NCBI GenBank assembly: GCA_965644495.1
Contig: CBFFSA010000001.1
Coordinates: 1,798,001-1,862,000 of the forward strand
Origin: Perkinsela sp. CCAP 1560/9
Lineage: Eukaryota > Protista > Euglenozoa: Kinetoplastea
Reading direction: 5' to 3'
Length of the DNA stretch: 64,000 bases
Below the pieces are notes generated by a model that ran no database searches, was not told the origin of the DNA, and saw only the letters and a program-made list of their open reading frames with translations. Position numbers and translations under genes: made by a program. This document shows positions 35,580-42,011 of this stretch, in pieces (positions within the stretch are counted from its first letter, which is position 1; each line of letters opens with the position of its first letter).

Positions 35580-35869
35580 TAAAGATAAAAAAAAATATAA
35601 TAACAGAACCTGCAGTACAATCACTCACTACATTTCACAGATCATCTCACAGGGCAAAGCTAAGGGACACTTAATTACGGGACACTTTTGACCAAAAAGG
35701 GGGTGTCCCTTAATTAAGGTGTCCCGTAATAAAGTTCCGCACTGTACGTCATGATCGCTCGCAGATATGACCTTCATACGTGAGGTGAACTCTTCGTTGC
35801 TCTCAACAGGGCTCATCATATAGAAAGGAGGATAATGTAAAAGAATTGTGCATGGGCGTATTGTTGTTT

Positions 35870-36078
35870 ATCATACGCTCTTTTGGTGCAAAAATAATCC
35901 CCTTAATGCGACGGCCGATATCATCGGCACATGATCCGCCTAAAACGGATGTCGCCAAGGGAGGTTCGACACGGACTCGGTCGGTAGAGGGGGTCCAGGC
36001 AACTCGCCCTCTCTTTACGCAGCCGGAGGGGCGCACTGCAAGCGACTCGGCCCCAGTCGGTAGAGGTGGTCCAGGCAA
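35870..36078 (-). repeat. Second, inverted partial copy of the structured sequence at 38325-38530
   Basis: Reverse-complement homology, including the three-way-junction units. Confidence 0.85.
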
Positions 36079-36117
36079 ATAATTGTACATTTAGGCAAAT
36101 AATTGTACTTAGGCAAA

Positions 36118-36900
36118 TCATTGTACATTTAATTTATGTAATGCATACACCGTGCATATACAGCACACATTCCTCACGAGGCACGGGCCCTTCTTATGCG
36201 TGTTTCTCACACTTTGAGTGGGATTTAGGTCTGATTCCTCACATGCAACCCTGATAAGTTCCTCTTTCGTTCTTGGGCATCTTTTATCAACTCTGTATTT
36301 TAAGACAGTCCAAAGAAATTCGATTGAGTTTAAATCAGGGCTATTCGGCGGCCATGTGGAAGACCATGTGTCGCCCAGAACATTCACTCCCATTTCGAAC
36401 AATTTATCTCTTACCTTCAAAGAGGAATGAGGCCCTCGTTTACACCCATCTTGCATAAATTTCCACATATACCGTGGGCGTGCACAATTCGTTATTTGTA
36501 ACAATATGTTTTCAAGACACTCGCAATACGTATCTGCATTCACGGAAGTGTGGTGAACATAAAGAGGTGATCTCCATTCCTCGTAGATAGGTCCGATAGC
36601 AGTCCAGAACATCACTTTTACAGGTTGTTCCGGAACTTGCCGGGTATGACACTCCGGTGGTTCCTGAGATCGCACCTTTCCGGGGTTGCTTTTTTTCTCA
36701 TTGACACTACCCTTTTAATACCCATGGTGAGCAACCACAGGCTGAGTTACCTCAACTCGGAGCGTACGACGATCGCAATGCGCATTTCGTTTATTATTGA
36801 ACGAAAATGCGGTGCTTCCATCACTTCCATCTCTAAAAAATATACAAGTAAGTGGATAAAAAAACGGTACGAAAATGGGTAAAAAGACACGATGAGAAAA
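36118..36900 (-). pseudogene. Tc1-like transposase fragment (42 aa between the second D and the E)
   Basis: KVMFWTAI, FMQDG...H, WPPNSPDLNSIEFLW and PRTKEEL. Confidence 0.8.
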
Positions 36901-37936
36901 AATGTGTTCAGAGTACTTAAAACATATGAACAAGGTGTCAAAGAACGGGGGTGGAATATTGGGTATTAAGCTTGTCTTTGTGTAATCTTCTTTTCCTGCA
37001 GTGATTGTATTTATGGGTTTTTACCCGGTAAATATGTCAAAAACTGGAACATTTTCGTAAAAGAAGCATTTGTTCGGCTCATTTTTTTCACAAAATAATT
37101 CGATCCTAATGAGTCGAGAAAAACCAGTTTAAGCAGCGGGAAACGCACCTATGTAAAATTCTCTCTGCGTTCAAAAAAAAGACGATAAAAAACAGACCAG
37201 TTTTTCAAATTTCGAGGGGGGGTGACATATAGCTGATTGCTAGTGTATGTATGTTTAAACATGTTTATATGTTTATACATATGTATGTATGTTTATACAT
37301 AAACATATGTAAAAACACGGGAAACCATATAGACTCCACAAGAGGGTTATGCGAAAGCTCGCGAATGCGGTATTACTACTGAAAATTGGCCAGGTTTTGC
37401 GAATGTTAGATCCCCATATATTTAGCGGACTCCCCTGTAGTATCCACTTTCTTGTTTACTTTCTTGTTTAAAAGGCAATTCTTTGCACTTTACTAAGTCT
37501 ACAAGACTCAGGTATGCCTCACAGAGCATTTTCACATATCCTGCGTACGGCTGAGGACATTACATCGTCACGTACCGGTCGGATTCGTGGTGTCAACGTC
37601 CCACAAGAATACGAACTTGCAAACTTTATCAAAGACGTCGGAAATACCGATCCCTCTTGGAATACCAACACGCCGGCATGTGAGTGGTATCATGTGATAT
37701 GTGATGAGGGAAATAAAACATCTAAGCTCGAGTGGGCCGGTCGCGAACTGGAGGGTCATATCTGTTTGAAATTTCTCCCTCACTCAGTGCTCGAAATTCG
37801 TGCTCAATACAATAAACTTAGTGGGGAATTACCTTTCAAGGACTTGCCTCCTGCAATTACGATCATTGACCTTACCAAAAATATTTTCACTGGATCAATC
37901 GATTTGACATGTTTACCGCAAACTTTGCGACTGCTA

Positions 37937-38533
37937 ATATAAAGATAATATAAAGGTAATATAAAGATACAGTTTCTGTACCTTGTTGGTACATTTTCTC
38001 TTTAGTTCATCTTTTCTTTCCCCGGCAACGGGCATAGTCTTACTGTTATATGCCCGTTGCCGGCCGGCACTAAGGCCGAAACTGTCCCTCTTTCTCGGCG
38101 AAGTAGGGGACGCGCTTCCACCCCATCACCCCTCCCCGGCTCACTCCTTGAGTGGGTTTTCTTCCCTCCCCGGCTTTCTACCTTTCGCGCCCTTTTCTTC
38201 CCGGGGAGCTATGCGCCATGGTGGCCTCCCTTGAGGACCACTGGGCGTGGCTCTGCCTCGTCTTATCGCGAGGCAGCGGTCGGTTGCAGTGCGCCCCTCC
38301 GGCTGCGTAAAGAGGTGGTGAGTTGCCTGGACCACCTCTACCGACTGGGACCGAGTCGGTTGCAGTGCGCCCCTCCGGCTGCGTAAAGAGAGGGCGAGTT
38401 GCCTGGACCCCCTCTATCGACAGAGTCCGAGCTAAACCCCCTTGGTGCGACATCCGTCAATACGGATTGTGCCGATGATATCGGCTGTCGCATCAAGGGC
38501 TGTATCTCTGCGCCAACGAGCGCATGAACATCA
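37937..38533 (+). mobile_element. Spliced-leader-headed, highly structured insertion (probable retro-copy or retroelement 5' UTR)
   Basis: Defined by the empty site in paralogs. It begins with (taatataaag[a/g])x3 running into an SL-like sequence, contains many hairpins, and has no long TSD. Confidence 0.65.
37959..37992 (+). ncRNA. Spliced-leader (mini-exon)-like sequence followed by GTAC
   Basis: ATATAAAGATACAGTTTCTGTACCTTGTTG|GTAC closely resembles the 3' part of the kinetoplastid SL exon (...AAGATACAGTTTCTGTACTTTATTG|GT). No Sm site or full SL intron was recognised. Confidence 0.7.
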
Positions 38534-39619
38534 AAACTCTCGTGTAATAAACTATCAGGAAACGTCGATTTGGGCCGTCTGCCCCTAAATCTTGAGTTCC
38601 TAGCGATAAATGACAATGCCTTCATGGGAACTCCGGGTCTACGTCGACTCCCACCAAATCTATCTTATTTGAATCTCAACGGAAATCGGTTCGCAGGCTG
38701 GGTAGAGTTGGATTCATTACCTTCAGTTATGTACGCTATATGCCTGGGTTGTAATAAAGAACTTCAAGGTGAGGTGAAGAATAGCCTTTTGACCCAGACT
38801 CCAAATCCGTTATATCTAGAGATTTATGATACAGAGATTACGCGCATTAATGACATAGAGATAGAATACACTGTACCAAAGGGCGTTTTCCAATTTTAAC
38901 TGTTTGTAAACATGCAATGCGATGAATATCGTTTCGGACTAAATATGGTTTTGTAAGATTGGGTGAACGAGTTAGTCGTTTATAGGAGAAAGACAAAAGC
39001 GTACAGGGTTGGTGTATTTACATTGATTCCGATTTTACTCCTCATTTAGGCCGTGCGTATTTATATTCATCTGGATTTGATTGGTGCTTGCGGATTTTAC
39101 TTAGACTTGCCCATTTGTTTTTTACATAATTGTATGTGTAAAAACCTTGTACATATTGACTCGGAATGATATAGATATTGACTATGAAATGTACAATAAT
39201 TGTACCTGTACTATGCTTGCCAATTTATAACCACTTACTCACGCATATAAACTTGTTTTTACGAATCCAAGTAAACATGTAAACATTTATTACCAAATAG
39301 TGGTATGTGATAAAAAGCGAGATCAACGGAACGTGACTTCGAATCGAAGCGTAGCTTACTTCTCCATTTCCACATACAATGTATTCGCAAAGTGAGACTA
39401 TAGTCGTCTCGAGAGACTAAGTTTATAGTATAAACCTAAGTAGTATAATATATTACTCTTGAAAAAGATATTCAAAATAATACTAAATATCCGAATGTAC
39501 TTCCTGTAACCCATAGCTACTGTCTCGCATCTCGATTGGATGTGTTCTCCTTTGTAGTGCGCAGGAAATCCAAATTTGTAGGGGCCTTTTTTTTCTTCAA
39601 TATCACCACAACTTGGAAT

Positions 39620-41249: not shown

Positions 41250-42011
41250 ATGTCTCACAGGACATTTTCACATATTCTGTGTGCAGCTGAGGATATTACA
41301 TCGTCACGTACCGGTCGGATTCGTGGTGTCAACGTCCCACAAGAATACGAACTTGCAAACTTTATCAAAGATGTCGGAAATACCGATCCCTCTTGGAATA
41401 CCAACACGCCGGCATGTGAGTGGTATCATGTGATATGTGATGAGGGAAATAAAGTATCTAGGCTGGACTGGGGCCGTATCTATGTACTGCGGGGCCGTAT
41501 CTGTTTGAAATATCTCCCTCACTCAGTGCTCGAAATTCATGCTAAACACAATAAGCTTACTGGGGAATTACCTCTCAAGGACTTGCCTCCTGCAATTACG
41601 ATCATTGACCTTTCCTACAATAATTTCACTGGATCAATCGATTTGACATGTTTACCGCAAACATTGCGACAGCTAGTCCTCCGGCGGAATAAACTATCAG
41701 GAAACGTCGATTTGGGCCGTCTGCCCCTAAATCTTGAGTTCCTGGCGATGAATGACAATGCCTTTACGGGAACTCCGGATTTACGCAGACTCCCCCCAAA
41801 TCTATCCTATCTTGATCTCAATAGAAATCAGTTGGCAGGCTGGGTAGAGTTTGATTCATTACCTTCAGGTCTGCTGGGTCTATGCCTGTTGGGTAATAAA
41901 GAACTTCAAGGTGAGGTGAAGAATAGTGTTTTGCCTCAGAGTCTAAATCCTTTCTTCGTAGAGATTCAGGACACGAAAATTACGTACATTAATGATGTAG
42001 AATTTTGTTGA
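41250..42011 (+). CDS. Short LRR protein (close paralog of 22242 and 37514)
   Basis: 253-aa ORF with the same caps and repeats. Confidence 0.9.
   Translation: MSHRTFSHILCAAEDITSSRTGRIRGVNVPQEYELANFIKDVGNTDPSWNTNTPACEWYHVICDEGNKVSRLDWGRIYVLRGRICLKYLPHSVLEIHAKHNKLTGELPLKDLPPAITIIDLSYNNFTGSIDLTCLPQTLRQLVLRRNKLSGNVDLGRLPLNLEFLAMNDNAFTGTPDLRRLPPNLSYLDLNRNQLAGWVEFDSLPSGLLGLCLLGNKELQGEVKNSVLPQSLNPFFVEIQDTKITYINDVEFC

What the first reader, a model, noticed from the sequence alone, without database searches (positions are those of the whole stretch)
37935..38010. Spliced-leader sequence written into the genome inside an LRR gene
Seen: the insertion that disrupts LRR 37514 starts with a triplicated taatataaag unit running into ATAAAGATACAGTTTCTGTACCTTGTTG, then GTAC and a pyrimidine tract. 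About 530 nt later an ATG (38524) lies at the same position as an ATG in the second copy (about 35875, minus strand). Known: this matches the conserved 3' part of the euglenozoan SL exon and its GT donor. Three explanations are possible: (a) a reverse-transcribed trans-spliced RNA; (b) the 5' junction of an SL-targeting retroelement moved to a new site; (c) a mobile element carrying its own SL mimic. Each would show RNA-to-DNA flow reshaping the LRR array.
Basis: partly seen in the sequence, partly recalled or inferred. Interest (0 to 1): 0.8.

Follow-up and report, generated by a model that had tools for sequence, protein, structure and literature searches.

The report
Spliced-leader-headed retroposon inside LRR gene
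The insert that breaks this leucine-rich-repeat gene is a young copy of a short non-coding jumping element that begins with a DNA copy of the last 28 bases of the cell's own spliced leader. So it was copied back from leader-carrying RNA; the "GT donor" after it is not the leader gene's intron.

Summary
The reading is partly right.

**What the insert is.** Window 37939-38535 is a 597-bp insert in an otherwise intact LRR gene. It has three parts:
- a 22-bp junction stutter;
- an exact copy of nt 11-38 of the organism's 38-nt spliced leader (SL), at 37961-37988;
- a ~548-bp non-coding body.

It is one of at least 40 near-identical copies (this copy is 1.0% from the consensus) of a SINE-like element.

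**The real SL RNA gene.** I found it next to a 5S rRNA gene. Its intron starts GTATGAGAAGC, so the GTACATTTTC after the relic is element body, not the SL donor or intron.

**Genome-wide pattern.** The SL core occurs 533 times, against 5 for a control. The listed and fetched relics, nearly all of them, end at the same exon base and run into many unrelated element bodies. That is a trans-splice junction written into DNA.

**Likely mobilising enzymes.** R2-type (RLE) LINEs are the probable partners. They share three features with the element:
- the same truncated head;
- a covarying 3' hairpin;
- the same insertion point in the LRR motif (12 of 28 copies, always sense, no target duplication).

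**The "triplicated unit".** It is target end (TAAT) plus the first 7 element bases, repeated. This 5'-junction stutter recurs at other copies.

**Open question.** Why the heads start at SL nt 11 is unexplained.

The scan has met this system before on other DNA of this genome. I found no published report for kinetoplastids.

The parts
37514..37938 (+). 5' part of the interrupted LRR gene, ending ...CTGCTAAT (Leu-Leu-Ile of LxxLxLxxN)
   Evidence: ORF list. Alignment to the intact paralog 41250-42011. With the insert skipped, the gene reads as one uninterrupted 262-codon frame, 87.5% nt-identical to the paralog.
37939..37960 (+). 5'-junction stutter: ATAAAGA + TAAT + ATAAAGG + TAAT. This is the first 7 nt of the element plus the last 4 nt of the target, repeated twice before the real junction.
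   Evidence: The same kind of reiteration occurs at independent copies L004, L007, L009, L078 and at LINE heads L061, L062. It also occurs at the SL-less truncated copy at 36079-36130.
37961..37988 (+). Relic of the spliced-leader exon, nt 11-38, exact copy
   Evidence: Identical to the SL RNA gene exon in L031. It ends at the exon's last base.
37989..38005 (+). First 17 nt of the element body (GTACATTTTCTCTTTAG): a pyrimidine tract ending in AG. It acts as an internal trans-splice acceptor in sister copies.
   Evidence: Copies L024 and L025 are 0.5-0.7% from the consensus. They lack exactly these 17 nt and have the SL fused to the next base. It is not the SL intron.
38006..38503 (+). Non-coding, GC-rich structured body of the SINE-like element. 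It includes a long hairpin at about 38022-38066, two tandem 76-nt units at 38279-38430, and a branched 3' domain at about 38437-38500.
   Evidence: No Rfam family and no tRNA-like part.
38504..38535 (+). 3'-terminal recognition motif: ATCTCTG, a 4-bp hairpin (38510-38523), then CATGAACATCAAA(A). The last A (38536) may belong to the target.
   Evidence: The motif is shared with SINE-B and with RLE LINEs L059, L061, L086. The hairpin is 100% paired, and 3 of 4 pairs show compensatory changes.
38536..38899 (+). 3' part of the interrupted LRR gene (Leu-Ser-Cys-Asn-Lys-Leu-Ser-Gly...). No target duplication or deletion larger than 1 nt.
35864..36078 (-).
   Evidence: (inverted repeats I1-I3). Full SINE-B copies are ~575 bp, SL-headed from nt 11, and end CATGATAAAC.
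36079..36130 (-). Triple junction stutter of the truncated SINE-B copy: target tail plus TTTGCCT, three times.
   Evidence: It shows that the stutter belongs to 5'-junction formation, not to the SL.
41250..42011 (+). Intact paralogous LRR gene that serves as the empty site.

Best explanation
The insert is a recent copy of a ~575-bp non-coding, non-autonomous retroposon (a SINE-like element, here called SINE-A) of a kinetoplastid-type protist.

**Origin of the head (inferred from junction anatomy).** Its first 28 bases are a DNA copy of nt 11-38 of the cell's own spliced leader. The leader was joined to the element's RNA by trans-splicing at an AG acceptor, and the RNA was then reverse-transcribed.

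**Mobilisation (partnership inferred).** The copying and insertion were done by R2-type LINEs that carry a restriction-like endonuclease (RLE). These LINEs have the same truncated leader head and the same 3'-terminal hairpin motif. They also insert at the same point of the LRR coding motif: between the codon after LxxL and the next Leu of LxLxxN, in sense orientation, without target duplication.

**The triplicated unit.** It is a by-product of 5'-junction formation, in which target end plus the first 7 nt of the cDNA are copied repeatedly. It is not a repeat within the leader.

**The GTAC after the relic.** It is element body, not the leader gene's intron.

**What is shown directly:** the relic's identity, the family structure, the target site and the shared 3' hairpin.

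**What is inferred:** trans-splicing as the source of the head, and the LINE partnership.

**What is unexplained:** why the head starts at nt 11.
For: **Real SL RNA genes**
- Two tandem 297-bp units lie beside a 5S rRNA gene. The exon is 38 nt and the intron starts GTATGAGAAGC.
- The relic equals exon nt 11-38.

**Genome-wide junction pattern**
- 533 SL cores against 5 for the control.
- In the listed and fetched sites, nearly all SL relics end at the same exon base and are followed by more than 10 unrelated bodies.
- Other families and SL-RNA retropseudogenes keep nt 2-5 to 38.
- In another family the unspliced AG-plus-body form lies beside the SL-plus-body form (L034).

**Sign of re-splicing in this family**
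- Sister copies lack exactly the 17 nt up to an internal pyrimidine-tract AG.

**Family and age**
- At least 40 copies at 86-100% identity. This copy is 1.0% from the consensus.
- With the insert skipped, the LRR gene is one uninterrupted frame.

**Partner LINEs**
- L059-L062 and L086 have an RT domain. They also have a CCHC knuckle plus RPD...ELT...RK..KY motifs, and their RT regions match PDB R2 proteins.
- Their heads start at nt 11.
- They carry the shared covarying 3' hairpin.
- LINE L059 sits in the same LRR position with a SINE-A directly behind it.

**Target site**
- 12 of 28 SINE-A copies lie in LRR genes at the same motif position, all in sense orientation.
Against: - Trans-splicing of this element's RNA is therefore inferred from DNA only.
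- No SL-less master copy with AG in front of GTACATTTTCC was found. Relic-bearing copies have no AG at the junction, so they cannot be re-spliced at the same place. How near-identical copies keep the same junction is therefore open.
- Heads cluster at nt 11 (range 6-20) rather than at the cap-proximal bases seen in other families. Stutter units restart at nt 11. This could mean an inherited or processed 5' end rather than a fresh leader each time.
- The exact autonomous partner of SINE-A is not pinned down. BLAST similarity to the LINEs is limited to the head, and the shared 3' motif is short.
Confidence: 0.75

Rival explanations
1. Inherited head. The leader piece was captured once, by trans-splicing, in an ancestor. 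It is now a heritable part of the element. New copies are made from read-through transcripts of relic-bearing copies. Their 5' end is set at SL nt 10/11 by cleavage or by a block specific to this LINE group, and no fresh leader is added.
For: - Every copy carries the relic, and no unspliced master copy exists in the assembly.
- In SINE-B, 8 of 10 heads (the 9 L048-L058 copies plus the one behind L007) start exactly at nt 11 and none extends further.
- Stutter units restart at nt 11.
- nt 10/11 is homologous to the nt 11/12 site used by CZAR/SLACS (PMC5814959).
Against: - At least 8 different SL-body junctions in this group all show the nt-11 start, including re-spliced variants 0.5-0.7% from the consensus. 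The truncation is therefore recreated after fresh splicing.
- Some SINE-A heads reach nt 6, 8, 8 and 9 with authentic SL bases.
- There is no 5' transduction of flanks.
- No ribozyme family was detected.
Confidence: 0.2
2. Origin from the SL gene. The element head is a piece of an SL RNA gene (exon plus donor plus intron). It would be either an SL-RNA-derived SINE or the flank of an SL-gene-specific retrotransposon carried to new sites.
For: - GT follows the exon copy.
- SL RNA itself is retroposed in this genome: L032 and L063-L067 carry exon plus intron plus an A tail.
- The head start coincides with the CRE-clade target position.
Against: - The true intron starts GTATGAGAAGC. Only 3 nt match, and there is no similarity beyond that.
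- Other families have non-GT bases directly after the exon.
- None of the 8 genomic exon-intron junctions is adjacent to an element end.
Confidence: 0.03
3. The relic works as a leader mimic. Transcripts of the element would donate their SL-like exon (TTG|GT) in trans-splicing, or the insert would be removed from the LRR mRNA as an intron.
For: A GT follows the exon copy, and a pyrimidine tract plus AG lies downstream.
Against: - The head lacks SL nt 1-10 and hence the capped end.
- There is no SL-intron-like sequence or structure.
- Removing GT...AG 37989-38005 would not restore the LRR frame.
- The stop codon at 37940-37942 lies upstream of the relic.
Confidence: 0.02

Closest known systems
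Relict spliced leaders in dinoflagellate retrogenes (DinoSL relics; PMC5585692, PMC6050394, PMC12014239)
   Same: A DNA-encoded copy of the SL exon sits at the 5' end of a retroposed sequence. Repeated splicing leaves further traces.
   Different: Here the tagged sequences are LINE and SINE families of a kinetoplastid-type genome, not cellular genes. In this group the head is truncated to nt 11-38. The insertions are site-specific.
LINE/SINE pairs that share a 3' tail (non-autonomous elements copied by a partner LINE's reverse transcriptase)
   Same: A short non-coding element carries the 3'-terminal structure of co-resident LINEs, with a covarying hairpin, and shows the same target preference.
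   Different: There is no tRNA-, 7SL- or 5S-derived promoter head. The 5' end is a spliced-leader relic. That fits an organism where read-through transcription plus trans-splicing replaces promoters (the last point rests on my own knowledge).
R2 and other RLE-bearing site-specific non-LTR retrotransposons
   Same: A single ORF with RT, a CCHC knuckle and a PD-(D/E)xK-type endonuclease. Oriented, site-specific insertion without a regular target duplication. Irregular 5' junctions.
   Different: The target is a protein-coding repeat motif (LRR), not rDNA. The elements carry an SL head.
CRE clade (SLACS, CZAR, CRE1/2) of trypanosomatids, inserted between nt 11 and 12 of the SL exon (PMC5814959, PMC12278014)
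   Same: RLE LINEs of Euglenozoa tied to the spliced leader. The head here begins at the homologous SL position.
   Different: These elements are not inside SL RNA genes. They carry the 3' part of the SL at their own 5' end. Clade membership could not be tested.

Membership tests
Bona fide SL RNA gene | Full exon from nt 1, followed by the SL intron, with a conserved upstream region and a T-run terminator | tested here: not met
   The window copy has only nt 11-38. It is followed by unrelated sequence. The real genes are at L031.
Non-autonomous non-LTR retroposon (SINE-like) | Multicopy, dispersed, defined ends, no coding capacity, no terminal inverted repeats | tested here: met
   At least 40 copies with the same ends. 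Only short unconserved ORFs. The ends are asymmetric.
Non-autonomous non-LTR retroposon (SINE-like) | 3' end shared with an autonomous LINE of the same genome | tested here: met
   The motif ATCTCTG-hairpin-CATGA is shared with L059, L061 and L086. Pairing is 100%, and 3 of 4 pairs are compensatory.
Non-autonomous non-LTR retroposon (SINE-like) | Small-RNA-derived (Pol III) head | tested here: not met
   No tRNA and no Rfam family. The head is an SL exon relic.
RLE (R2-superfamily) non-LTR retrotransposon (the partner LINEs) | RT followed by a CCHC knuckle and a PD-(D/E)xK endonuclease; no APE domain | tested here: met
   Only RVT_1 (and zf-RVT) found in Pfam. The RT region matches PDB R2 proteins. 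CCHC is invariant, and RPD / ELT / RK..KY motifs are present. The C-terminal part alone gave no PDB hit.
CRE clade (SLACS/CZAR/CRE) | Insertion inside SL RNA genes at exon nt 11/12 | tested here: not met
   All 8 exon-intron junctions are uninterrupted genes or retropseudogenes. The elements sit in LRR genes, microsatellites and other DNA.
CRE clade (SLACS/CZAR/CRE) | RT phylogeny groups with SLACS/CZAR/CRE1/2 | not testable with these tools
   No named reference sequences were returned. The nearest hits come from another assembly of the same organism.
Relict-SL retrocopy (dinoflagellate type) | SL exon copy ending at the exon's 3' base, fused to the sequence downstream of an AG acceptor | tested here: inconclusive
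   The exon end is exact. The re-spliced variant is fused after an internal AG. The primary acceptor of the GTAC junction was not found, and there are no RNA data.

The most novel reading that the evidence does not exclude
The RLE LINE/SINE group descends from spliced-leader-gene-specific elements and still recognises the leader sequence. Its enzyme, or its bound protein, would cut or stop at SL nt 10/11, the ancestral target position, on its own trans-spliced RNA or cDNA. The nt 11-38 head would then be a functional, regenerated element boundary. These elements would have retargeted from SL genes to a conserved LRR coding motif while using the host leader for cap and 5'-end definition.
Probability: 0.15. 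Interest if true: 0.85.

Novelty: new variant of a known kind. Interest (0 to 1): 0.62.

Why it matters
- **How the elements are expressed.** In a trans-splicing protist, whole LINE and SINE families appear to be propagated from leader-carrying RNA. That would explain how retroelements get a defined, capped 5' end in a genome without gene promoters. It also gives a built-in tag for recognising retroposed DNA, as in dinoflagellates.
- **Effect on a gene family.** The elements hit one exact point of the LRR coding motif. They therefore keep breaking and reshaping a large gene family. In this window the gene is otherwise intact and a paralog preserves the empty site.
- **A testable link.** The fixed nt-11 start of the head connects these elements to the classic SL-gene-specific retrotransposons of trypanosomes.

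Tried and rejected
- **Rfam.** Gathering thresholds on the whole window and permissive thresholds on 37900-38600 gave no HDV-like ribozyme or any other family. ARAGORN found no tRNA-like head.
- **SL intron against element body.** No similarity.
- **Unspliced master copy.** I searched for the body start preceded by AG. All 17 exact hits are preceded by G; those I inspected are preceded by the SL end, and the rest lie at SL-headed SINE-A copies already listed.
- **First guess at the SL 5' end.** I guessed AACGC..., read from a stutter in L004. It was wrong. The real exon starts AACTTTAACG.
- **SL-headed elements with GTAC-type bodies.** Nine were fetched in the hope of finding the LINE. All were short non-coding relatives next to host genes.
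- **Naming the LINE clade.** The homolog search gave only unnamed metagenome and assembly proteins. The closest ones come from another assembly of the same organism, so there is no independent species.
- **PDB search with the LINE C-terminus alone.** No hit.
- **BLAST of SINE-A against the LINEs.** Only the SL head matches.
- **Stutter statistic.** A 6-mer count gave 11 of 51 heads against 6 of 51 controls, which is weak. The case rests on about 7 clear examples with 8-17-nt reiterations.
- **Literature.** I found no paper holding the SL 3' string and no report of SL-headed retroelements in kinetoplastids.

Full report
**1. What is in the sequence**

The ORF 37514-37942 encodes the N-terminal part of an LRR protein. 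It stops in TAA at 37940-37942.

The intact paralog at 41250-42011 gives the empty site. The target reads ...CTGCTAAT | (A)CTCTCGTGTAAT.... The break lies between the codon after LxxL and the next Leu of LxLxxN.

Skipping 37939-38535 (597 bp) leaves one uninterrupted 262-codon frame that is 87.5% nt-identical to the paralog. No more than 1 nt is duplicated or lost. The insertion is therefore the only lesion in the gene.

**2. The insert is one copy of a dispersed repeat**

A search of the organism's own 21-Mb assembly with 37935-38540 gave 47 matches from 40 scored candidates (359 candidates at first look). Identities were 86-100%. Nearly all matches start at query positions 22-30 and end at 600-604.

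Flank alignment of 28-29 copies shows constant ends:
- a head (A)TAAAGATACAG...;
- a tail ...GCGCATGAACATCAAAA.

There are no terminal inverted repeats. This copy differs from the family consensus at 6 of 576 positions. There is no tRNA-like or Rfam-recognisable part and only short unconserved ORFs. I call it SINE-A.

**3. The organism's real spliced leader**

CAGTTTCTGTAC occurs 533 times, against 5 for the reversed control. Listing what follows the core singled out a few sites where the exon end ...CCTTGTTG is followed by GTATGAGAAGCTTCGA.

Two of these are tandem 297-bp units in G000:C1 around 661,300-661,660 (L031). They have identical upstream regions and a T-run, and a 5S rRNA gene lies beside them. 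These are the SL RNA genes. The exon is 38 nt (L031:1317-1354:-) and the intron is about 70 nt.

Six other exon-intron sites start at exon nt 3-5 and end in an A run (in one of them the intron is also cut short). They are retroposed SL RNAs.

Window 37961-37988 equals exon nt 11-38 exactly. The bases after it, GTACATTTTC, share only GTA with the intron. An alignment of the intron with the element body scores below the shuffle mean. The 'GT donor' reading is therefore wrong.

**4. Why the head points to trans-splicing**

- Nearly all of the 100 listed sites end the SL at the same base, and what follows differs by family: AATTATTTCC..., ATTATTTACT..., ACTTTTCTTA..., AACAGATTAA..., GACAATATTT..., GTACATTTTC..., TCTTTTGTAC... 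and others. An exact exon end fused to unrelated sequences is what trans-splicing produces.
- In one other family, the unspliced form (AG followed by the body start) lies 40 nt upstream of the SL-fused form (L034).
- Within SINE-A, copies L024 and L025 are only 0.5-0.7% from the consensus. They lack exactly the 17 nt GTACATTTTCCCTTTAG, and the SL is fused to the next base. That is directly after a pyrimidine tract plus AG. Older relatives (L083, L084) have the same junction. This is the product expected if a transcript of a relic-bearing copy was trans-spliced again at the internal acceptor and retroposed.

No RNA evidence could be obtained, so this step stays inferred.

**5. Two classes of head**

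- SL RNA genes start at nt 1.
- SL-RNA retropseudogenes start at nt 3-5.
- Several families start at nt 2-3. From my own knowledge, the hypermethylated cap-4 nucleotides would stop a reverse transcriptase there.
- SINE-A, SINE-B and a set of LINEs start at nt 11 plus or minus 2 (range 6-20).

In SINE-A the starts are: nt 6 (1 copy), 8 (1), 9 (1), 10 (7), 11 (8), 12 (6), 13 (3), 14 (1), 15 (1). In SINE-B, 8 of 10 start at nt 11 (the 9 L048-L058 copies plus the copy behind L007).

At least 8 different SL-body junctions in this group, including the re-spliced ones, show the same start. The truncation is therefore a reproducible property of this group's machinery, not a single accident.

Counted from the conserved core, nt 10/11 of this 38-nt SL corresponds to nt 11/12 of the 39-nt trypanosome SL. 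That is where CZAR and SLACS insert (PMC5814959). The alignment to the trypanosome SL rests on my own knowledge of that sequence. I could not explain the coincidence, and no SL gene here is interrupted.

**6. The 'triplication'**

The 22 nt before the relic read ATAAAGA-TAAT-ATAAAGG-TAAT. The target ends in TAAT and the element starts ATAAAGA. The structure is therefore (target end plus first 7 nt of the element) repeated.

Independent insertions show the same thing:
- L004: ACGCTTGA plus ATAAAG, repeated.
- L007: GATACAGTT plus TTGGTG.
- L009.
- L078: three head pieces of 11-15 nt.
- LINE heads L061 (three ATAAAGAT units) and L062 (a 17-nt head piece plus CTGT, repeated).

The truncated SINE-B copy in this window has a triple reiteration of target tail plus TTTGCCT at 36079-36130, with no SL involved. 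The stutter is thus a by-product of 5'-junction formation. A likely cause is template switching between the cDNA or RNA end and the upstream target end, as is known for R2-type enzymes. That mechanism is inferred.

**7. Partner LINEs and target**

Several SINE-A copies lie directly behind 4.7-4.9-kb LINEs: L059, L060 and L061 (L062 is cut short).

Features of these LINEs:
- They encode one long ORF (up to 1612 aa) with RVT_1, and the RT region matches PDB R2 proteins.
- C-terminal of the RT lie an invariant CCHC knuckle and RPD...ELT...RK..KY motifs of a restriction-like endonuclease.
- They are 30-57% identical to each other.
- Their heads start at SL nt 11 (nt 16 in L060).
- Their 3' ends, and that of L086, carry ATCTCTG, a 4-bp hairpin and CATGA, as SINE-A and SINE-B do.
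- In an alignment of 7 such ends the hairpin is 100% paired. Three of 4 pairs show compensatory changes. Slid controls reach 4-57% pairing.

LINE L059 sits after LPSKMRHL-N of an LRR gene. A SINE-A lies behind it, and the LRR resumes after the pair.

Of 28 SINE-A copies, 12 have LRR coding sequence on one or both flanks. All 12 are at the same motif position and in sense orientation. The rest lie in a (GT)n run, LINE tails and other DNA. The conserved Asn codon AAT lies 8-10 nt downstream of the break.

**8. Verdict**

- Explanation (b) fails its test.
- Explanation (c) survives only as the variant 'inherited head'.
- Published parallels are the relict leaders of dinoflagellate retrogenes (PMC5585692, PMC6050394). 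Trypanosomatid mobilome surveys list CRE elements only inside SL genes (PMC12278014). My searches found no report of SL-headed LINEs or SINEs in kinetoplastids.
- The scan had already met this system on other pieces of this genome. I re-derived the main points independently.

Noticed in passing
L032, L063-L067 (G000:C2:801.6k, C1:410.1k, C20:10.9k, C25:23.9k, C49:34.4k, C86:12.0k): Retroposed copies of the whole SL RNA (exon from nt 3-5 plus the intron, cut short in L063, followed by an A run). The unspliced SL RNA itself is a template for the genome's reverse transcriptases.
   Followed up: partly
L031 (G000:C1:660300-662600), 5S rRNA at L031:1744-1862 (+): Only two tandem SL RNA gene units (297 bp) are assembled, next to a 5S rRNA gene on the opposite strand. 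The array may be collapsed in the assembly.
   Followed up: partly
L034 (G000:C1:2477000-2482800): A 5093-bp tandemly repeated element. Its SL-fused body start lies 40 nt downstream of the same body start preceded by AG, so unspliced and spliced forms sit side by side. The head keeps SL nt 2-38.
   Followed up: partly
L035:600-700 (G000:C1:1473.6k): After a poly(A) run there are two heads in a row. The first is a nearly full SL piece from nt 1 to about nt 20 with a small deletion. The second is a head from nt 3. Head reiteration therefore also occurs in the full-length-head families.
   Followed up: no
window 36118-36675 (-) and 35640-35760 (-): A Tc1/mariner-type transposase fragment (motif WPPNSPDLNSIEFLW) with a probable terminal repeat downstream. 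The truncated SINE-B copy lies between them, so it seems to have inserted into a DNA transposon.
   Followed up: no
L002/L060 (G000:C1:3069.6k): A SINE-A copy inserted inside a long (GT)n run that directly follows the 3' end of an RLE LINE. The same LINE's head is also preceded by (GT)n.
   Followed up: no
window 38279-38430: Two tandem 76-nt units inside the element (89% identical). Other loci (C82:20.9-21.3k, C14:126.2-126.5k) appear to carry extra units.
   Followed up: no
G000:C1:3218570-3218613: Two SL heads facing each other in a near-perfect palindrome (seen in the list).
   Followed up: no
whole genome G000: The reverse-transcriptase domain search found 1072 candidates at first look in 21 Mb, 150 of them scored over the cut-off. 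Many have open frames over 1000 aa. The genome has an unusually retroelement-rich load for a small genome.
   Followed up: no
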